Assembly (NCBI RefSeq): GCF_032191835.1
Contig: NC_083233.1
Span: 53,444,001 to 53,508,000 of the forward strand
DNA: 64,000 nucleotides
Direction: 5' to 3'
DNA from: Heteronotia binoei
Taxonomy: Eukaryota
The notes beneath the pieces were generated by a model. It saw only the letters and a list, made by a program, of their open reading frames with translations. It was not told the DNA's origin and did no database searches. Each line of letters opens with the position of its first letter. Position 1 is the first letter of the stretch. The position numbers were made by a program, and so were the translations under genes. Below are positions 6,382 to 26,858 of this stretch, in pieces.

Positions 6382-6747
6382 CAGGGGTGGCCACATGTGG
6401 CTCTTTCACACATATTGTATGGGTCCCAAAGCCCCCACCTCCCCATCAGTAGGCTTGAAGCAGGCATTCCTCTCTTTAAATCACTTCTCTAAGCCAAGTC
6501 AGCCAGTGGCTTGGAGACGGCATTTAAAGTTAAAGTTGCTTTCTTTCCANNNNNNNNNNNNNNNNNNNNNNNNNNNNNNNNNNNNNNNNNNNNNNNNNNN
6601 NNNNNNNNNNNNNNNNNNNNNNNNNNNNNNNNNNNNNNNNNNNNNNNNNNNNNNNNNNNNNNNNNNNNNNNNNNNNNTACAGCTCTCAAACATCTGACAT
6701 TTATTTTATGTGGCTCTTATTACATTAAGCATGTTTGGCCACCCCTA
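6382..6747. mobile_element. hAT-type MITE spanning the N gap
   Basis: caggggtggccac...tggccaccccta termini on either side of the gap. Confidence 0.7.
6550..6677. other. Assembly gap (128 N)
   Basis: Run of n. Confidence 1.
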
Positions 6748-6964: not shown

Positions 6965-7025
6965 ATGATGAGGGGCCTTCATGAGTGCTTATTGCTTCTG
7001 TTGTCCCTGTGTGGAATCACCTCAG
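6965..7025 (+). CDS. Fish-egg lectin-like gene A (FEL-A), coding exon 1 (signal peptide MMRGLHECLLLLLSLCGITS)
   Basis: ATG at 6965, hydrophobic leader, donor CAG|gtaagc; 61 nt, phase 1, in frame with exon 2. Confidence 0.85.
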
Positions 7026-11233: not shown

Positions 11234-11461
11234 CTCTGCAGTGTACTGTAGTTCCAGGAGCTCTTACACAGATTGATGTCAGCAATGGACAAGTCTTTGG
11301 TGTGAACAGAGCAGGCAATATTTATACCTTGTATGGAACCACATGGACCCAGTTACCAGGGGCACTGACCCATGTCACAGTCGGTCTTGATGGCATTTGG
11401 GGTGTGAACTCAGTTAACTCCATCTATAGACTTGTGGGTGGCAACTGGAAGCAGGTTACAG
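11234..11461 (+). CDS. FEL-A exon 2 (ALQCTVVPGALTQIDVSNGQVFGVN...WKQVTG)
   Basis: cccag| acceptor, |gtattt donor, 228 nt phase 1-1; tectonin repeats (W-x-x-x-x-G-x-L-x-x-V...GVN) resembling carp fish-egg lectin. Confidence 0.95.
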
Positions 11462-12398
11462 GTATTTTAAGTCAACTCACTTTGTGGGGGTGTGAAAGGA
11501 GAATAAATAAACAGAGATATGGATATTGAAGACAGAATGTGTTTAAAACCCAAATTATATTTTCATAATGTAAGTACAGCCATCTGTATAAGTCATGCAC
11601 TGATCTCTGCTTCTGTGATAGTGAGAAATTACTTCAGAAGAACCAAAAATCCATATTTTCCTAATGAGAAAAATATATGCATGTGGGGAGAAATGGCAAA
11701 CTGGAAGAGAAATATACGACTTTCCCTGTGTTTATAATGCACTGAAAATGTTCTTCCATTATTTCTACACAATATTATTCTGTCATATGGGCTCTTGACC
11801 TGGAAGTATGCCTGGCTGAAGGGAAAAAAATACAAGAGTATTTTCTGGTTGTACAATATGCCAGTTAGTTAGTTTCTAACCCCCACTCCATCCCATGTTG
11901 ATGAAATTAGTCTATATGATTGGTTGGACACACTTATACACCAGGTTTATATTACAAGGGGATAAAATAGGGTATGTCAACCTAAACATACCCATGATTG
12001 TAATCCCTAGCTGATTTCTTCTGACATATTTTAAAATTTGATTATATCTTCATTAGAGAATTGAACAGGCAAATATTCAGTGTGCCAGAATTCAATTTCA
12101 ACCTGAAATTTCCTTGAGCCCCAAAATGAGGTGAAAGACCACATATGAATTTGGTAAATAAATCTGCATACATCAATCATCAAATACTGTGCTACACTGA
12201 AAACAATACAGGATGTTAAAGATATACTTCAATATTCAACAAACCCTCAAGCAGTCAGAGGCTTATCTGGAATACAGTCAATTATCAAACTTTATATATG
12301 GGGACAAATATATGTTGGGAGCAAACTTAATTCAGTTCTGTTCCACTAGGCTTCAAGTCTCATGTCCAGTAGACCTAGATCTTTCTGTTACTTTTCAG

Positions 12399-12738
12399 GT
12401 TTGCTGAAACAAATTGATGCAGGAGGAAGCCAGTTTATAGTTGGAGTCAACATGAATGATGACATCTATTGCCTGCCCAAGTCAGCAGCCATTGCTGCTG
12501 ATGGCAACTCAGAACTGCCTTGGGTCCACATTGAAGGAAAGCTCAAATACTACTCCTGTGGGCCACTGGGTTGCTGGGGAGTTAACTCAGCTGACGCCAT
12601 CTTCTTCCGGCATGATGTCACCCCAGATTCCTGTGCCGGATCCAGGTGGCAGAATGTGCCTGGCGGGCTTTCCATGATTGAGGTTGGGACAGAAGGAGAT
12701 GTGTATGGAGCAAACAGCGCTGGACAGATTTATCGGAG
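12399..12738 (+). CDS. FEL-A exon 3 (GLLKQIDAGGSQFIVGVNMNDDIYC...EGKLKYYSCGPLGCWGVN...GQIYR)
   Basis: ttttcag| acceptor, |gtacag donor, 340 nt phase 1-2; motifs LLKQ(I/V)DAGG, GVNMxDDIYCL, GKLKYYSCGP and LSMIEV match fish-egg lectin. Confidence 0.97.
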
Positions 12739-13743
12739 GTACAGAATGGACTACTTAGAGAATGGGAAAGGCTTTCCTCTCCATAAAGCCATGCATCTTA
12801 CACAGGAACTGTGCCCCTAATATTAATTAGATGTGATAGCGATGGGCCCATCACTTTAAATGTGGATCTATAGGGTGGCAGTTGAGTATAAGAGTTAAAA
12901 GGATGGTTGAGAGATGCTGAATCATAACTGTGTCTCATTGGTCCTGGTGCTGTTCTCCCAGCCAGGATTGCCTTCCGTATCAGAAAACAGCTGAGGGAAA
13001 AGTAGCATTAGAGGACAGCCAAGCCACAGAGAGATAACCAACTGATAGCGGAACAGTTCAGTATTGCCCACCTGAAAAATACTTCATGCTTAACATGAGA
13101 TTCCCTGCTCTCTCTCCTTCTCCTGATAGGTGCAGTTTCTTATTTAAAGAGTTAGATAAAGTTTATCCCTCACAATGTGATTTTAGAGATTAAGCCCAGA
13201 GAAATCTGAGAAAGAAGCTCCCTGCAGTAGAGTTTCCAATCCCCAGTTGGAGACAGGGAATCCCCTGATTTGGAAGCCCTCCCTCTGCTTCAGGATCATC
13301 AGAAAGGTGTGGGGAGGGAAATTGTTGCTGGGCACTCCATTATATCCTATGGAGATCAATTCCCATAAGGTATAATGGATAATTGATCTGTAGGTATTTG
13401 GGGCTCCAGAGGCTTTAGGTAGAGGCACCGTAATTTCAGCATAGTATCTGGTAGCTCTCCTCAAAACACTCCCCAAGTTACAAAAAGATTGGACCAGGGG
13501 GTTCAATTCTATGAGCCCCCAAAGAAGATGTCCCTATCCTCCATTATTTCCTATGGAAGGAAGGCATTTAAAAGGAGCATGGTCCCTTTAAATGTGATTG
13601 CTAGAATTCCTTTTGGAGTTCTATCATGCTTGTCACTCCCTTGCTCCTGGCTCCACCCCCAAAGTCTCCTAGCTCCATCCCCAAAGTCTCCTAGCTCCAT
13701 CCCCAAAGTCCCCAGATATTTCTTCCCTATGGGGTGGGGGTTG

Positions 13744-14012
13744 AGAGCCAGTTTGGTGTAGTGGTTAAGTATACAGACTCTTATCTGGGAGAACCAGGTT
13801 TGATTCCCAACTCCTCCACTTACAGCTGCTGGAATGGCCTTGGGTTAGCCATAGCTATTGCAGGAGTTGTCCTTGAAAGGGCAGCTGCTGTGGGAGCCCT
13901 CTCAGCCCCACCCACTTCACAGGGTGTCTGTTGTGGAGGGAGAAAATACAGGAGATTGTAAGACGCTCTGAGTCAGAGAGAAGGGCAGGGTATAAATCTG
14001 CAGTCTTCTTCT
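13744..14012 (+). mobile_element. tRNA-derived SINE (Squam3-like); related copies at 14303-14562 (+), 34385-34660 (+) and 39725-40187 (-)
   Basis: A box tggtgtagtgg, B box ggtttgattcc, (TCT)n tail. Confidence 0.8.
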
Positions 14013-14995
14013 TCTTGAGCAAACTTGGCAACCCTACTCTACCATTTAGGTTTTCCTCCATGAGGCAAGTAACACTTCAAAATTATATCAGGAAAGTGGC
14101 TCAGGGAGATGACTTAGCATCACCTGTCCTCTTGTCACAAACCTAACCTGAGTTGAGTGTCCTTTGGCTGCTTTTAAAAATCATGGATATCTCTGCATCC
14201 GGTCTAGTTTTTTTTTTTTTTAATGACTGAGAATGAAGTTTTAAGTGAATGAAGAAAGGCTGGAACATGGGTAGCCACACACCAGAGATGTTCACGTTAA
14301 CGAGTCTTTGGTGGTTAAGAAGAGCACAGACTCTAATCTGGGAGAAACAGGTTTGATTCCTCACTCCTCCACATGCACCTGCTGATGGAACCTTCAGTCA
14401 GTCACAAGTTCTCTCAGAACTGCTCCCTCAAGAGCAGTTCTTGAAAATGCTCTTTTAGCTCCACCTACCTCACAGCATGTCTGTTTTGGGGGGAAAAGGA
14501 TATTGTTAACCCACTCTGAGATTCCAAGTAAAGGGCAGGATATAAATCCAGTCTCCTCCTCCTTTTTTGATAGTAGATAGGGGGAAGAAGGAGGAAGACC
14601 AAATAGGGGGGACCAGGTGGGTGGCAGTTAGAGCAAGGAGCCCAGAAAGGGTGTGTAGATGCCCAGGCAATGTCATGGTTTTTCCTTCCATTCCAAATTA
14701 CTTTTAATAACCAGCTGGTCGTTTCCCTTATGCCTGGATTTCTAATGGACAATGCCAATTTTGCCAAACACCTGAAAAGTCCTGGCTACAAAAGTAAGCA
14801 ATGTATGCCCTAGCAAGGTGTTTTCTTCAGATCCTAGATTTAGTGTCTCACTTTACTCATAGAACACATAACTCTAGCAGTTTTTAAAACTTTATTGTCT
14901 GTAACACTTGTACATAGAGACGCAATTCAAAAACTTCATCCCACAACTACAAAGCAAACTAATTCTTAGGATATTCTTGTTAAATTTTCTTGCAG

Positions 14996-15140
14996 GGTTG
15001 GAATCAGTGCTGCCAATCCCATTGGAACTGCGTGGGAACATTTGAGCCTTGACCTTGGAGCGATTAAACACGTGTCGTATGACCTGGGCCACCTGTGGGT
15101 TTTGACTACAGAAGGAAAAATTTTGAACTGCAAAGGTTGA
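14996..15140 (+). CDS. FEL-A exon 4, terminal (RVGISAANPIGTAWEHLSLDLGAIKHVSYDLGHLWVLTTEGKILNCKG*)
   Basis: ttgcag| acceptor, phase 2, TGA at 15138-15140; KHVSYDLG-x-LW matches FEL KHVSFDLGVLW; joined CDS 774 nt = 257 aa; ATTAAA at 15207. Confidence 0.93.
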
Positions 15141-15281
15141 CCAGTCATTCATAATTTCTTTGCCAGCAGTGCTTGCTTTGTTTGTCATGGCCAGTGGTGT
15201 CAAGACATTAAACATTATCCAGTGATACAGGCAAATGCTTCCTGTGTGTCATCCTCTCTTTTTCAAGTTTTCAACAAACTT

Positions 15282-15787
15282 AAGTTGGGGCTGGAGTTCT
15301 TCCAGAGCTGCAACTGATCTCCAGAAGGATCAGTTCCCCCAGATGAAATAGCAGGTTCAGAGGGTATACCATAGAGTCTAGAACAAACTGAAGTGAAGAA
15401 AATCACTTGTATTTTCTGTAACACAGTCCCCCTCCTTTTCTTTTAAAGACAGTAAAATATCTGAGACAGATGTTATTTCCCAGCTCTCATCCCTTTCAGA
15501 AACTAGACCAAAATAGCTGATGCTTAATATATATTTAATTTGCAATGAAATTCATGTACTTTTAAACTGATAAAGCTTGGTCACTTACGATTCTTGAGCA
15601 AGCTAAATAGATTTATGGTTGGAATTTTTTAAAAAAATGAAAGGAAATATCTTCTAAATTTGTTTATCAAACTCAAGTTGGGGCTGGAGTTCTTCCAGAG
15701 CTGCAACTGATCTCCAGAAGGATCAGTTCCCCCAGATGAAATAGCAGGTTCAGAGGGTATACCATAGAGTCTAGAACAAACTGAAGT
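15282..15787. repeat. Exact 113-bp direct duplication (15282-15394 = 15675-15787)
   Basis: Identical base for base by inspection. Confidence 0.95.
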
Positions 15788-18276
15788 CCTAGATTAACAT
15801 CACATCCCCGCTGAGCTGCTGCCCCTCCTCAAATTCCACTATCTCCAGACTTTGGCCCCAAGTTTCTAGGAATTTCCCAAGTTGGAGTTGTCAATCTTGT
15901 TTTTAAGAAAGAGGAAAGGGAACCTGAGACTGGTTTTTGTGATATTCACAATGGAACTGCACAAAAAGCAGTATGTGTTAAGAGCACTGAGAATAACTAC
16001 TTTTTAAATACATTCTAATAATCATGGGAATTTCATCATCACTGTTCAAACAGCTCTGCATTTTGATGAACATTTTAAATAATCATCTGAAGCTCAAAGT
16101 TTGCAAGGAATGGTGGTGGTCTTCTCAGATCTTCCTAAATGGCATTACTGGATACAGTTTCTTGCACAACTGGTGCTTCCTTTTTAAAGGGAGAAGCATG
16201 CATTGTGACACACAGCCTACTTTCTGATCTTAAATTTTCTACCCACAATGTGTCCAGACAGCCTATGCCTATTCAGTGCTGAGAGGCATTATGCTTATGT
16301 ACAGATGCACATTCTTTTGTTAACATTTCATTTGTGGCAAAGCCTGGGAATTCTAAGCAGTTTCCAAGACTGACCTGATCAAACCGACATTCTTCCTGTG
16401 CTTAACTGCTGCAGGATTCCAAGGATGCAAGTGCTTTCTAAGAATTCTGCTATGGAGAGGTTAGAGTTAGAAACCAGTTGCTGACTATCTGCCAAGGCTC
16501 TTCTTGGATCATTAGCAGTTTAGGAGATTTTTCCCAGGCTCTGACTTCCCACATCCTTCAAAAAATCCTAATCTGAGGCATTGGTTCTTACCTGCTGTTT
16601 GCTATCTACATTTATAACTATGAATGGCCCTATGGCAAATGTCCTCTGCCATTGCCATCATGGCCTGCTTAAAACTAGGTTGAAAATGGCTAAACAAATA
16701 TGGCAAGAGGCATTCAGATGAACATCATGACATATTAACTTCGCTTGCAAATCCAGTCCAAAACTATACTTTGCAATGCAAATTCACACCTCAAAGTCTA
16801 TTTTCTTGCTCTAGGATTGCCAGGTCCCCCAGGCCATCAGTGGGGAATGGGGGTAGCATTGCCAGATTGGGAAACTCCTGGAGGCTTGGGATGGAGCCTG
16901 GGGAGGGCAGAGACTTCAGTGGGTTATAATGCCATAGAGTCAGTCCACCGATCAAAGCAGTCATTTTCTCCAGGGGCACTTATTTCTGTATCAGGAGATG
17001 AGGTGTAATTTGGAGGATCCCCAGGTCCTACCTAGAAGCTGGCACCATATCTTCTCACTGTCATACTGCTTAGCAGAACTCATCAGATGCATCCTTGCTG
17101 ACTGTTAAGGAGTTTGATTGCCCTGACCTCAATTCACAACAATGGCAGTCACTGATGTGGGCACAGAAACTTATTACATGATGGTGTGGAATAACATGAC
17201 ATGTTCTGATTCAAGCTGAAGTTGCAGGCCTGGAAGGAGCTGTGACTGAAATCTCCAAGGCATATTTAGATGTGGAAGACATAAAAGGTGCAGGCCAAAT
17301 CAAATTGAGATATGTTTTGTGTGATTAAAGGGTTTTCCCCACAATAATGCCTTGCAATTGTACAACTTTTCTTTGCAGCTATTTGTATTTTATCTAATCT
17401 TATGAATCAATATGAGCACCAACATTAAACTATAAACAAGTTTTTATTAGCCTTTCAGTTCTCTGTCATTTACCACAAGGAAAAGAATGAAGAAAAGCAG
17501 ATAACACAAATAGAGATCATTTTTATATGCGGCAGAACCAATCTCAAGGCAAATATATCTATATGTTGTTATGCAATATTTGACGCATGAACCAGCTGGG
17601 AAAGAGAATTGTTGGCAACAAGTATTTTGGATGATTAAGATCTGGGCTGAACTTCTGTTTCCCTTCCTGATACTTCCTGCTATTTAATCTTGGGCGTGGC
17701 CAAAGGCTTGAGCCTTTTGGTGTGAGCCAAAGAGCAAGACTGTTTATCTTTGGCTCTTAGCTCACTGTTCATAATTTGTGGTTATGAGAGAGGCAGCCCA
17801 ATGAATCTAAGAACAGTTCAGAATGAAGCATATTGTACTCCTTGGGATTTTTTTTTTTGTATATTTGTACATTGTAAACTGCTTCACACACTCCACTGCA
17901 GAGGAAAAGGGGATAGATAAATACACTGTGTCTCTGTAATGGGTAAGGCTAAATATTTAACATCCTGCAGTGTGCTACATGGTGACCCTTGAGATGCATC
18001 TTTTGACCTAGGATGACATTCAAAGATAACATTGGGGTTGGGGGGGGGAGACTAACGGAGGAATCCAGACACTCCAATTGCCTTCCTTGGAGTAAGGGAT
18101 GGAACAATAGAATGAAGGGGAATGACCCATCCATCTTCATTTCTAATGGCACTGCAAGCACAAGCAAATATGTTGTCAAAAATGTGTCAAGTGGGAGATG
18201 TGGATTTGGGGAGTGGGGTTATATGTTCTTCCCCATCTAATTCAAAACAGAATACTCAGTGCCTCTCTTAAAGACA

Positions 18277-18324
18277 ATGAGAGAGACCATTACATGCTGA
18301 TATTGCTATATAGAATCACATTCA
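18277..18324 (+). pseudogene. FEL-B paralogous exon 1, frameshifted relative to FEL-A
   Basis: Aligns by eye to FEL-A exon 1 (ctctctt-aaagacaATGag vs ttctctt-gaacatgATGag; gaatcacattca|gtaagt vs gaatcacctcag|gtaagc) but is about 10 nt shorter; ATG 18277 reaches TGA at 18298-18300; alternative in-frame ATGs at 18294 and 18198. Confidence 0.65.
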
Positions 18325-19372
18325 GTAAGTGGGAACTAGAACTTCATTCCTAAACTCTGCAGCCTGTGACTCACAGTAAGGGGGAATTCAGATTGCTGTG
18401 GTTCAAATATCCAAGCTTTGCTATGATTACATCAAGGTACCTATAGTATTTATTGATGATGAGTTCCTCTGAATGGCATGAGGGTGTTGCCGCCACGCTG
18501 TAAGCAGCAACAATACTGAGGCATGATACTTGGCGGGAGGGGGGCCACTGCAGATACCAGAATGAGGGTTGCCAGCATTGGGTTGGGGATTACCTGGAGA
18601 TTTGGGGGTGGGGGTAGAGCCTGAGAAGAGTGGGGTTTGGGGAGAGACTTCAGTGGGGTATAATTCTATAGAGTCCACCTTCCAAAGCAGCCATTTTCTC
18701 CATATGGACTGAACTCCATTGCCTGATCAACAGGAGATCTCCAGCCACCACCTGGAGGCTGGCAACTCTAACAAGATCTCTGTTAACAAGGCAAGCTCTA
18801 TAACTGAATGAGCAGGTCCTATCAGGGCAACTAGTAAAAGCGGAGGGGTTGTAAGAGCAGAAGTCAAGGCTGTGGATGTCGCTAGTAGAGAAAACCAGAG
18901 CAGCAACCAAGGAGAGGCAAAAGAACAAGGAGGGAGGAATCAGGGAAACCCATATGGAGGCCACCAAACACAATCTTAAGCCCAATACCAGGTGGGCTTT
19001 TGCTCAGGCATTATTTTTAGCTAGGCCAGATCAGGAGGAACACACCACTAGGGTGCTGGAGATATGGAACATATCTTTCATTCCATACCATAAATGGAAG
19101 ACCACCAGGAGACTTCTAATCCTTATCATACAATGTCCTTATCAAACCACAAGGCTGTTCATACCCAGATGAACAGGAGATAATTTTCTTGTTCCAGACT
19201 GAGACTTGCATGAGCGATGGTTCCTCACAGGAGCAGGGATATCTGCAGTATTCTACCCATCTCAATCCAATCTTATCCTCTTTGGGATATACCTACATTT
19301 GTGATAGACCTGCATTTATGACAGACCTACATTTGTGGATGAGCATATAAACATGACACCTTTTTGCTCTAG

Positions 19373-19600
19373 TTTCAGATTGTGAACAGGTGCCTGGAGC
19401 ATTGACCCAGATCGATGTCAGCAATGGACAGGTCTTTGGTGTGAACAGTGCAAGCAACATTTACACCTTGTATGGAAACACATGGACCCAGTTACCAGGG
19501 GGACTGACCCATGTCACAACTGGTCCTTCTGGAGTCTGGGGTGTCAACTCAAATCATAACATCTACAGGCTTGTGGGTGGCAGCTGGAGGCTGGTTACAG
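19373..19600 (+). CDS. FEL-B exon 2 (SDCEQVPGALTQIDVSNGQVFGVN...WRLVTG)
   Basis: ctag| acceptor (alternative cag| at 19378), |gtattg donor, 228 nt, same size and phase as FEL-A exon 2, open frame. Confidence 0.92.
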
Positions 19601-20485
19601 GTATTGTAAGACAGCTGATTCATGGTTGTATGGATGCATAAGAAACGGGGAGAGGGGATGCTAAAGGCATGCACAAAAAAGAATATTTATTAGCAAAATT
19701 TGGCAAAAGGTGGCTTTCTTGTGTAATCACTTTTGCCTCTGAAGTTTTGTTCTCACCCAGTGCCTACAGTCAGCCCATGTTATCTGTCATTTGCAAGCTG
19801 ATTGAGTCCTATAATGATATAAAGAAAAGGTTGTTGGGTAGGTGCAACCAAGAGAAAAAAACAGCCTTCTATCTGGAGTCTGTATTAAAGGCACTGGAGC
19901 AGAAGTTGTGAAAGGGGGATACAGAATCTGCTTTGGTTTGTGTTCCATCACTCATATAGCACAGGCTCTCAAATAGACAACAGATGCCAATTGAATTTTT
20001 ATGGAGGAACTTTACTTGATTCACAATGGAAGTTCTACACTCAGTAAACATCCAAGGACTGCTCTTTCCCTAATACTTTATTGTAAAACAATACTCATTA
20101 CAGAGTTCTTTGAATGGTGTGCACCCATAAAACTCGATGTGTGAAAGAAAGGGCTAGCTTTGCATATCCTCATACATTACCAGGCTTCTAACATGCACAT
20201 CAAATGGCAATTCCACCACTGCATGATCAAAAGCCATAGTACTTACTAAATATGCTTCAGCGTTCCTGGTTGTACAATGAATCCAGATCCCATTCATCTT
20301 ATATGCCGCCATAAACTCCAGTGGTATGGTTGCCTGGGCACATGATGAACCACCCAGGGCTTAGTTGACATCAGCTGAAACAACTGAATTTCTTTCTGCA
20401 TATCGTACCAAATGTGACCTAATCCTTAATATATACATTTTGATAGGTTGCCCTAAAATCCTAGATCTTTCTGCTATTTTTTCAG

Positions 20486-20825
20486 GTTTGCTCAAACAGA
20501 TAGATGCAGGTGGAAGCCAGTTTATAGTTGGAGTCAACATGAATGATGACATCTATTGTCTGCCCAAGTCAGCAGCCATTGCTGCTGATGGCAGCTCTGC
20601 ATTGCCCTGGATCCACATTGAAGGAAAGCTCAAATACTACTCCTGTGGGCCACTGGGTTGCTGGGGAGTTAACTCAGCTGACGCCATCTACTTCCGGCAT
20701 GATGTCACCCCAGATTCCTGTGCCGGATCCAGGTGGCAGAATGTGCCTGGCGGGCTTTCCATGATTGAGGTTGGGACGGAAGGAGATGTGTATGGAGCAA
20801 ACAGCGCTGGACAGATTTATCGCAG
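20486..20825 (+). CDS. FEL-B exon 3
   Basis: ttttcag| acceptor, |gtacta donor, 340 nt, open, about 96% identical to FEL-A exon 3. Confidence 0.95.
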
Positions 20826-21286
20826 GTACTATTAAGAAGACTCTGGCTGGAAGAGTCTCCATCTTTTGGAGGTGTACTGCCACTTACAGGAGGCTGTGGC
20901 ATGTCTTGAACCAGAGTAGCAAATACTAAAGCAAAGAGATAATTCTGGAGGGATTTCAGTTCCTTCGTGACCGAATACCTGTGACTCAAGCAGCATTTGA
21001 GTACAAACCACCCAGGGCAGGTCATTGGATTCAGTTTCAATCTCAAGCATGACCACCTCAAAGCCAATCAACACATTATACACATTCCTGATGTATTTTT
21101 AAATGGGGAAAAAAGTCTCCTGTGGCTGCAACTCTGAGAGGAGATCAGTCAGCAAAGTACGGTTGCCAATCCCCAGGTGGGGCAATACAAAGAACAAACA
21201 CTGTGATATACAAGCTACAATGTTCAGTAACTTTATGAGTCATATAAATCTGTTGCATGTATTATATTATAAATACAACTTTACAT

Positions 21287-26713: not shown

Positions 26714-26858
26714 GGAAGGAATCACCAAAGGCAATCCTATTGGAACTTCTTGGTCACTAGTAGACAAAAAAAATGGGAAAGCTAAGCATGTGTCCTATGA
26801 CCTGGACCGGATGTGGGTTGTCACTTCAGAAGGGAACATATTCAAATGCAAAGTATGA
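26714..26858 (+). CDS. FEL-B exon 4, terminal (REGITKGNPIGTSWSLVDKKNGKAKHVSYDLDRMWVVTSEGNIFKCKV*)
   Basis: ttttcttccag| acceptor, 145 nt as in FEL-A, TGA at 26856-26858, KHVSYDL motif. Confidence 0.93.

What the first reader, a model, noticed from the sequence alone, without database searches (positions are those of the whole stretch)
12399..20825. Exon-3-restricted homogenisation between FEL-A and FEL-B (gene conversion)
Hand counts: exon 3 differs at 14 of 340 nt, versus about 47 of 228 (exon 2) and about 49 of 145 (exon 4). The last 214 nt (12525-12738 / 20612-20825) have only 3 differences, including third codon positions. The introns diverge immediately after GTAC, with only about 30 nt of similarity upstream of the acceptor. 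Purifying selection alone does not preserve synonymous sites this way. Inference: a recent or recurrent conversion tract keeps the central propeller blades identical while the terminal blades diverge.
Basis: partly seen in the sequence, partly recalled or inferred. Interest (0 to 1): 0.75.

Follow-up and report, generated by a model that had tools for sequence, protein, structure and literature searches.

The report
Exon-3 gene conversion between gecko lectin paralogues
Two neighbouring fish-egg-lectin genes of a gecko, duplicated before the gekkonid-Sphaerodactylus split, keep their third exon almost identical because that exon alone is repeatedly copied from one gene to the other; this is a clear but ordinary case of gene conversion.

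Summary
Exon 3 (12399-12738 vs 20486-20825) differs at 14 of 340 nt, exon 2 at 47 of 228, exon 4 at 49 of 145. The last 214 nt of exon 3 differ at 3 sites.

Synonymous divergence (dS) is 0.04 in the 3' 210 nt of exon 3. It is 0.35 in its 5' 126 nt, 0.43 in exon 2 and 0.74 in exon 4.

I fetched both paralogues from Gekko kuhli, G. japonicus and Sphaerodactylus townsendi.
- Exons 2 and 4 group by paralogue (17 and 22 diagnostic sites among the three gekkonids).
- Exon 3 has no paralogue-diagnostic site and 12 sites where both copies of one species share a state.
- The introns on either side of exon 3 are paralogue-specific and conserved across species.
- dS of the tract against Sphaerodactylus (0.47-0.60) and a turtle (about 1.2) is normal, so synonymous constraint is excluded.

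Conversion is therefore recurrent in gekkonids. It is confined to exon 3 plus about 25 nt of intron 2, and it is patchy within the exon.

No DNA reads were available. RNA contigs confirm FEL-A's exon 3 only.

A side finding: RNA contigs splice FEL-A exon 4 in frame into FEL-B exon 2, and FEL-B's own first exon is degenerate.

This is a known kind of event in a family where I found no report of it. The scan's only other notes on these genes are on this same stretch.

The parts
6965..7025 (+). FEL-A exon 1 (start codon and signal peptide; ends in phase 1 before GTAAG)
   Evidence: Read directly from the sequence. Conserved in G. kuhli, G. japonicus, S. townsendi and P. picta.
11234..11461 (+). 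FEL-A exon 2 (228 nt, first two propeller repeats)
   Evidence: Splice sites. Tectonin profile positions 2-70. Present in FEL-A mRNA contigs (loose end at 19408).
12374..12398 (+). Last ~25 nt of FEL-A intron 2, similar to FEL-B 20460-20485; part of the converted island
   Evidence: BLAST match. In the cross-species comparison FEL-A of the window has the B-type 'cctag', and both G. kuhli copies share 'tttccag'.
12399..12738 (+). FEL-A exon 3 (340 nt), homogenised with FEL-B exon 3
   Evidence: 14 of 340 differences. No paralogue-diagnostic sites against 12 species-shared sites. The sequence is confirmed by RNA contigs physically joined to A exon 2 and A exon 4.
12525..12738 (+). Youngest conversion tract, FEL-A side (3 differences in 214 nt; dS 0.04)
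   Evidence: Win_A+Win_B clade with support 94/98.
14996..15140 (+). FEL-A exon 4 coding part (stop at 15138-15140). An internal GT donor at 15136-15137 is used for read-through splicing. Poly(A) tails start after about 15235.
   Evidence: joint 15135|19373; poly(A) loose end at 15235. Frame check.
18277..18324 (+). FEL-B exon-1 relic: the first ATG is out of frame because of a 2-nt insertion. No RNA contig depth here.
   Evidence: Depth is 0 in the bin 18158-18355 in all four runs.
19373..19600 (+). FEL-B exon 2 (228 nt from the RNA-supported acceptor at 19372|19373; a second AG lies at 19378)
20460..20485 (+). Last ~25 nt of FEL-B intron 2, similar to FEL-A 12374-12398
20486..20825 (+). FEL-B exon 3 (340 nt), homogenised with FEL-A exon 3; the youngest tract is 20612-20825
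   Evidence: Its flanking introns are B-type and conserved in Gekko and Sphaerodactylus.
26714..26858 (+). FEL-B exon 4 (145 nt including the stop), strongly paralogue-specific
   Evidence: The A|B split has 100/100 support.

Best explanation
FEL-A and FEL-B are tandem fish-egg-lectin (tectonin propeller) paralogues whose duplication predates the split of Gekkonidae and Sphaerodactylidae. Their introns and their exons 2 and 4 have diverged along the paralogue tree. Exon 3 plus the last ~25 nt of intron 2 forms an island of retained homology. This island is repeatedly overwritten by non-allelic (interlocus) gene conversion, so both copies of a species come to share that species' own substitutions, synonymous ones included. 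In this genome the youngest tract covers at least 12525-12738 / 20612-20825.

Shown: the homogenisation itself, its recurrence in three gekkonid lineages, and its boundaries.

Inferred: why it is confined to exon 3. Heteroduplex formation needs a few hundred bases of high identity. Only exon 3, the longest and most protein-constrained exon, still offers this. The flanking introns are unalignable between paralogues, and exons 2 and 4 are shorter and 17-34% diverged. Each conversion restores identity and so keeps the island convertible.
For: 1. Within-species A-B dS in the 3' 210 nt of exon 3 is 0.04 (window), 0.04 (G. kuhli), 0.18 (G. japonicus) and 0.67 (S. townsendi). In exons 2 and 4 it is 0.43-0.74 in all four species.
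2. Window-G. kuhli orthologue dS in the tract (0.09 for A, 0.13 for B) exceeds the within-species A-B value of 0.04.
3. Site patterns among the six gekkonid sequences: paralogue-diagnostic sites number 17 in exon 2, 0 in exon 3 and 22 in exon 4. Sites shared by both copies of one species or genus number 2, 12 and 1. Fisher p = 1.3e-9.
4. About five of the shared states are derived in the window's lineage (12485, 12615, 12666, 12711, 12727) and are present in both copies.
5. The per-exon trees and AU tests agree.
6. The introns flanking exon 3 are paralogue-specific and conserved across species. A-type intron 3 begins gtacagaatggactact; B-type begins gtaccact.
7. Each copy carries a private change inside the tract (12736 in A, 20778 in B, with the other geckos keeping the alternative state). 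This fits real post-conversion divergence.
8. RNA contigs from three runs reproduce FEL-A exon 3 at the sites that differ between A and B. The Phe/Tyr site 12603 is polymorphic in FEL-A transcripts.
Against: No genomic reads of this animal could be laid, so FEL-B exon 3 of this assembly has no independent read support.

Orthologue dS between the window and Gekko in the tract (0.09-0.13) is about half that of exons 2+4 (0.20-0.29). The Poisson probability of so few differences is 0.009-0.07. A mild local reduction of the synonymous rate therefore cannot be excluded.

Support for the species pairs in the two Gekko species is moderate (50/84 and 72/87), because the tract is short.

GC3 is not raised in the tract, so there is no sign of GC-biased conversion.

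The reason for the restriction to exon 3 is an inference, not a test.
Confidence: 0.85

Rival explanations
1. Selection, not conversion. The 3' part of exon 3 carries a constraint on synonymous sites (splicing enhancers, RNA structure or an overlapping element) that keeps both copies alike.
For: Window-Gekko orthologue dS in the tract is somewhat low: 0.09-0.13 against 0.20-0.29 in exons 2+4. The protein sequence of this part is strongly conserved as far as turtles and carp.
Against: dS in the tract is 0.47-0.60 against Sphaerodactylus orthologues and about 1.2 against a turtle, no lower than in other exons. S. townsendi A and B differ at dS 0.67 in the same tract. Constraint cannot produce derived states shared only by the two copies of one species. 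There is no Rfam match, and the fold z-score is 0.19.
Confidence: 0.03
2. Assembly artefact. One copy's exon 3 was collapsed onto, or polished from, the other in this assembly.
For: No DNA reads were available to exclude it. All four runs found behave as transcript contigs. FEL-B exon 3 has no independent read support.
Against: The same exon-3 homogenisation appears in two independent assemblies, G. kuhli and G. japonicus. The window's two copies keep 14 differences, including private derived states on each side, and sit in correct paralogue-specific introns. FEL-A exon 3 is confirmed by RNA contigs linked to A exons 2 and 4.
Confidence: 0.04
3. A single old conversion in the gekkonid ancestor, with no later events. 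Today's similarity is then simply the age of that event.
For: All six gekkonid exon-3 sequences are close to each other (dS 0.04-0.26). Sphaerodactylus is not homogenised in the 3' part.
Against: Within-species A-B dS (0.04) is below orthologue dS (0.09-0.13). Eight sites separate both window copies from all four Gekko copies, and about five of these are derived in the window's lineage. Two sites each are private to both copies of G. kuhli and to both copies of G. japonicus. The patchy pattern at 12406-12415 shows separate tracts: A-type is kept in the window and in G. japonicus but overwritten in G. kuhli.
Confidence: 0.06
4. Conversion templated by a spliced transcript (cDNA-mediated), which would explain why the tract stops at the exon border.
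For: The 3' end of the tract lies within 4 nt of the donor site.
Against: About 25 nt of intron 2 are homogenised together with the exon, including species-specific intronic states. The neighbouring exons 2 and 4, which a spliced template would carry, are not converted.
Confidence: 0.02

Closest known systems
Interlocus (non-allelic) gene conversion giving partial concerted evolution of tandem paralogues, as described for globin, class I ADH, GOT1 and MHC genes (for example PMC3924837, PMC3409193, PMC3728101 and PMC4379404, listed)
   Same: Paralogues are more alike within a species than orthologues are between species. Synonymous sites are homogenised. There are discrete tracts with divergent 'islands' next to them, and the flanks follow the orthology tree.
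   Different: Here the convertible unit is a single 340-nt exon plus ~25 nt of intron, inside genes whose introns are otherwise unalignable. The process has persisted in several gekkonid lineages. A full-text search found no report of it for this lectin family.
Fish-egg lectin of carp (PDB 4RUQ / 4RUS), a tectonin-type beta-propeller lectin
   Same: Exon 3 aligns to residues 77-188 of the 238-residue carp protein at E = 2e-43. The Pfam Tectonin domain is present. FEL-A has the signal peptide and four-exon layout also seen in the other gecko FEL-A genes.
   Different: These are lizard paralogues of unknown ligand and tissue. FEL-B has no usable first exon of its own.
Read-through (conjoined) genes and annotated double fish-egg-lectin proteins of frogs (P0124, 446 aa, Dendropsophus)
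   Same: RNA contigs join FEL-A exon 4 to FEL-B exon 2 by a GT..AG splice that keeps the frame. The predicted product has two lectin modules in a row.
   Different: The evidence is one contig in each of two runs of one study. The share of such transcripts and the existence of the protein are unknown. G. japonicus lacks the GT donor.

Membership tests
Interlocus gene conversion / concerted evolution | In the tract, paralogues within a species are closer than orthologues between species | tested here: met
   dS is 0.04 within the window and within G. kuhli, against 0.09-0.13 between them. Win_A+Win_B clade has support 94/98.
Interlocus gene conversion / concerted evolution | Flanking sequence follows the paralogue (orthology) tree | tested here: met
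   Exon 2 and exon 4 trees split A from B (89-100 support), and a window A+B clade is rejected. The flanking introns are paralogue-specific across species.
Interlocus gene conversion / concerted evolution | Derived substitutions are shared by both copies of one lineage | tested here: met
   12 species-shared sites in exon 3 against 0 paralogue-diagnostic sites. Polarised with outgroups. Fisher p = 1.3e-9 against exons 2+4.
Interlocus gene conversion / concerted evolution | Homogenisation includes synonymous sites and is not explained by a low local synonymous rate | tested here: met
   dS of the tract is 0.47-0.60 against Sphaerodactylus and about 1.2 against a turtle. A mild reduction against Gekko is noted.
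Interlocus gene conversion / concerted evolution | Both copies are real in the genome (not a collapse or polishing artefact) | tested here: inconclusive
   No DNA run was found. RNA contigs confirm the FEL-A copy only. Two other assemblies show the same pattern.
Fish-egg lectin / Tectonin family (PF19193) | Tectonin domain above the curated threshold | tested here: met
   Exon 3 of A and B scores 148 bits and exon 2 scores 83-88 bits; the cut-off is 30.
Fish-egg lectin / Tectonin family (PF19193) | Sequence match to the solved carp fish-egg lectin | tested here: met
   4RUQ residues 77-188, E = 2e-43.
Fish-egg lectin / Tectonin family (PF19193) | Own signal-peptide exon (secreted lectin) | tested here: inconclusive
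   FEL-A meets this. FEL-B does not: its exon-1 relic is frameshifted in the window and has lost its GT donor in both Gekko species.
Read-through / conjoined gene | Canonical splice joint between the two genes in RNA that keeps the reading frame | tested here: met
   Joint 15135|19373 with GT..AG ends, in runs X1 and X2. In frame.
Read-through / conjoined gene | The full-length fused transcript and protein exist | not testable with these tools
   Only short contigs were available, and no contig was shown to cover FEL-B exons 3-4 with B states.

The most novel reading that the evidence does not exclude
FEL-A and FEL-B work as one conjoined unit. FEL-B has lost its own start exon and is made mainly by splicing FEL-A exon 4 into FEL-B exon 2, giving a secreted two-propeller lectin. 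Conversion of exon 3 is then favoured by selection, not merely tolerated, because it keeps the central sugar-binding blades of the two halves identical while the outer blades diverge.
Probability: 0.12. Interest if true: 0.55.

Novelty: new member of a known kind. Interest (0 to 1): 0.35.

Why it matters
This is a well-bounded natural example of how short and how similar a stretch must be to keep undergoing conversion between old duplicates. One 340-nt exon is converted, while a 228-nt exon at 79% identity and a 145-nt exon at 66% identity in the same genes are not.

It also has a practical consequence. Trees or dating of this lectin family built on whole coding sequences will be misled by exon 3.

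The side finding explains how FEL-B stays under purifying selection without a working first exon, and it suggests a two-module lectin that could be tested.

Tried and rejected
- **Word search with exon 3 alone.** It gave only four hits because of the length window. I rescued it by re-querying with a turtle exon ORF (P0001) and then with the G. kuhli protein. No further gecko species turned up.
- **Run search.** It found no DNA run of this animal. The two runs labelled 'DNA?' carry spliced joints and poly(A), so the assembly check by genomic reads failed.
- **GC-biased conversion.** GC3 of the tract is not raised.
- **Direction of the last conversion.** Four strict diagnostic sites are B-type in both window copies, and matches to Sphaerodactylus B outnumber matches to A by 24 to 13. 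The A branch is long, however, so I do not claim a direction.
- **Overlapping RNA element.** There is no Rfam match in 6000-28000 and no unusual fold.
- **Third FEL copy in the window as donor.** None was found.
- **Literature.** Full-text searches found no paper on gene conversion in fish-egg lectins or on reptile FELs.
- **Joined models.** Exons were searched one at a time by reference. Pieces were placed side by side only inside scripts, for the frame check, the permutation test and the dN/dS of exons 2+4.
- **N run.** The N run at 6550-6677 was left untouched.
Full report
**Gene models**

The window holds two tandem fish-egg-lectin genes on the + strand.

| Gene | Exon 1 | Exon 2 | Exon 3 | Exon 4 |
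|---|---|---|---|---|
| FEL-A | 6965-7025 | 11234-11461 | 12399-12738 | 14996-15140 |
| FEL-B | relic at 18277-18324 | 19373-19600 | 20486-20825 | 26714-26858 |

- Exons 2 and 3 of both genes match the Pfam Tectonin domain; exon 3 covers profile positions 70-178 of 216.
- Exon 3 aligns to residues 77-188 of the solved carp fish-egg lectin 4RUQ.
- There is no third copy in the window.

**The observation**

| Region | Length (nt) | A/B differences | dS |
|---|---|---|---|
| Exon 2 | 228 | 47 | 0.43 |
| Exon 3, whole | 340 | 14 | - |
| Exon 3, 5' 126 nt | 126 | 11 | 0.35 |
| Exon 3, 3' 210 nt | 210 | 3 | 0.04 |
| Exon 4 | 145 | 49 | 0.74 |

The counts are, and the Nei-Gojobori dS values. The dS values use whole codons only (219, 126, 210 and 141 nt).
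- The three differences in the last 214 nt are at 12603, 12691 and 12736.
- Permutation of the differences gives p about 5e-5, both for the 87-nt identical run and for the run of 56 identical third positions.
- Third-position differences are 2 of 70 in the tract against 48 of 162 elsewhere, p = 6e-7.
- Outside coding sequence, the two genes align only over the last ~25 nt of intron 2 and the GTAC after the exon-3 donor.

**Relatives**

A word search with exon 3 alone found little. Its best hit was an exon-3 reading frame on a turtle contig. Re-querying with that hit and then with the Gekko kuhli protein found both paralogue types in other geckos.
- A type: G. kuhli, G. japonicus, Sphaerodactylus townsendi, Paroedura picta.
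- B type: G. kuhli, G. japonicus, S. townsendi.

I fetched the genomic loci L004-L009 and extracted the exons.

The duplication therefore predates the Gekkonidae/Sphaerodactylidae split. From general knowledge this is on the order of 100 million years; I did not test that here.

**The decisive comparison**

Within-species A-B dS in the 3' 210 nt of exon 3 is:

| Species | A-B dS, 3' part of exon 3 |
|---|---|
| Window | 0.04 |
| G. kuhli | 0.04 |
| G. japonicus | 0.18 |
| S. townsendi | 0.67 |

In exons 2 and 4 the same measure is 0.43-0.74 in all four species. Orthologue dS between the window and G. kuhli in the tract (0.09 and 0.13) is larger than the within-species A-B value.

Site patterns among the six gekkonid sequences:

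| Pattern | Exon 2 | Exon 3 | Exon 4 |
|---|---|---|---|
| Separates all A from all B | 17 | 0 | 22 |
| Both copies of one species or genus share a state | 2 | 12 | 1 |

Fisher's test on this table gives p = 1.3e-9.
- With Sphaerodactylus, Paroedura and the turtle as outgroups, about five of the shared states (12485, 12615, 12666, 12711, 12727) are derived in the window's lineage and present in both copies.
- Two sites each are private to both copies of G. kuhli and to both copies of G. japonicus.

Maximum-likelihood trees agree.
- Exon 4 splits A from B at 100/100.
- Exon 2 splits them at 89-97.
- The 3' part of exon 3 pairs the two copies of each gekkonid: 94/98 for the window, 72/87 for G. 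kuhli and 50/84 for G. japonicus.
- AU tests reject a window A+B clade in exons 2 and 4 (4e-7 and 8e-44).
- AU tests also reject a clade of the gekkonid A copies in the tract (0.0014).

**Boundaries**

The introns next to exon 3 are conserved between species within each paralogue type and are unrelated between types. The island of homology is therefore exon 3 plus ~25 nt of intron 2.

That intronic piece is converted too.
- FEL-A of the window carries the B-type 'cctag'.
- Both G. kuhli copies share 'tttccag'.

Inside the exon the pattern is patchy.
- Sites 12406, 12412 and 12415 keep an A-type state in the window and in G. japonicus, but were overwritten in G. kuhli.
- The loop-coding cluster at 12507-12524 stays divergent.
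- Site 12603 keeps an A-type T in the window and in G. japonicus.

**Rivals**

- *Synonymous constraint* fails. The tract has normal dS against Sphaerodactylus (0.47-0.60) and the turtle (about 1.2). S. townsendi A and B differ at 0.67. No RNA family or unusual fold overlaps the tract. There is one caveat. Window-Gekko orthologue dS in the tract is about half that of exons 2+4, and the Poisson probability of so few differences is 0.009-0.07. A mild local effect cannot be excluded.
- *A single ancestral conversion* fails on the lineage-specific shared sites.
- *A spliced-RNA template* fails because intronic bases are co-converted and neighbouring exons are not.

**Assembly check**

The run search returned only five small-share runs, all held as contigs. 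Laid on 14990-20900, the two runs labelled 'DNA?' show spliced joints and a poly(A) tail. They are therefore transcript-derived, and no DNA-level check was possible.

FEL-A mRNA contigs (for example a 957-nt contig in X3) link A exon 2, exon 3, exon 4 and a poly(A) tail starting after 15235. At the listed sites where A and B differ they read the A states, which confirms FEL-A exon 3 independently.

At 12603 the FEL-A contigs of X1 and X2 read the B-like A, and X4 holds both letters. That site is therefore polymorphic.

FEL-B exon 3 has no independent read support. Three things argue against an artefact:
- the same pattern appears in two other assemblies;
- each copy carries its own private state inside the tract;
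- the FEL-B exon sits between correct B-type introns.

**Mechanism**

The homogenisation, its recurrence and its limits are shown. The cause of the restriction is inferred.

Conversion needs a stretch of high identity, and only exon 3 provides one. It is the longest exon and the most constrained at the protein level, with dN of 0.006-0.03 against 0.16 and 0.40 in exons 2 and 4. Each event renews the identity that allows the next.

Selection against converting the functionally diverged exons 2 and 4 is an alternative or additional cause that I cannot separate from this.

**Side finding**

FEL-B's first exon is degenerate.
- In the window, a 2-nt insertion puts the first ATG out of frame.
- In both Gekko species, the GT donor is lost.
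- No RNA contig covers the relic.

Yet FEL-B exons 2+4 evolve under purifying selection, with omega 0.3-0.5, the same as FEL-A.

RNA contigs in runs X1 and X2 join 15135 to 19373 with GT..AG ends.
- The donor lies 5 nt before the FEL-A stop codon.
- The acceptor is the one that gives FEL-B a 228-nt exon 2.
- The reading frame is kept.
- Only 2 nt are shared at the joint, so this is not a de Bruijn graph chimera.

The donor is present in G. kuhli and S. townsendi but not in G. japonicus. Frogs have annotated double fish-egg lectins of about 446 aa.

This suggests, but does not prove, that FEL-B is expressed as a read-through fusion with FEL-A.

**Verdict**

This is a clean, recurrent, exon-bounded interlocus gene conversion: a known kind of event in a family where full-text searches found no report of it. 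Interest is moderate to low.

Noticed in passing
window 15135|19373 (FEL-A exon 4 to FEL-B exon 2): RNA contigs in two runs splice FEL-A exon 4, from a GT donor 5 nt before its stop codon, into FEL-B exon 2, and the frame is kept. This would make a two-module lectin. It would also explain why FEL-B stays under purifying selection without a working first exon.
   Followed up: partly
window 18277-18324; L008:22693-22806; L004:28692-28788: The FEL-B exon-1 relic is broken in different ways. The window has a 2-nt insertion after the ATG, while its GT donor is intact. G. kuhli and G. japonicus have lost the GT donor. No RNA contig depth lies on it in the window.
   Followed up: partly
window 12603 (FEL-A exon 3, Phe/Tyr codon): FEL-A transcript contigs read T in X3, the B-like A in X1 and X2, and both in X4. 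One of the three remaining A/B differences in the young tract is therefore polymorphic in FEL-A.
   Followed up: partly
L009:4198-4533 (Paroedura picta): An intact, open B-type exon 3 with B-type intron flanks lies about 5.5 kb upstream of the P. picta FEL-A gene. No B-type exon 2 or 4 was found nearby. It shares species-specific residues with the P. picta FEL-A exon 3, so it may also take part in conversion.
   Followed up: partly
L004 / L005 (Gekko japonicus scaffold KQ747144.1): In G. japonicus, FEL-A and FEL-B are about 45 kb apart, against about 3 kb in the window. The FEL-B exon-1 relic lies about 37 kb from FEL-B exon 2. Exon 3 is still partly homogenised there (dS 0.18).
   Followed up: no
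window 14992-15133 in run X2: The FEL-A exon 4 part of the read-through contig in X2 differs from the window at 6 of 142 nt. Its FEL-B exon 2 part differs at 0 of 127. This could be a divergent allele of a fast-evolving exon or an unseen further copy.
   Followed up: no
window 16772-17167 and 18554-18949: Very high summed contig depth with many loose ends and irregular joints in all runs. This is the signature of a dispersed repeat (SINE-like) between the two genes, not of a transcript of this locus.
   Followed up: no
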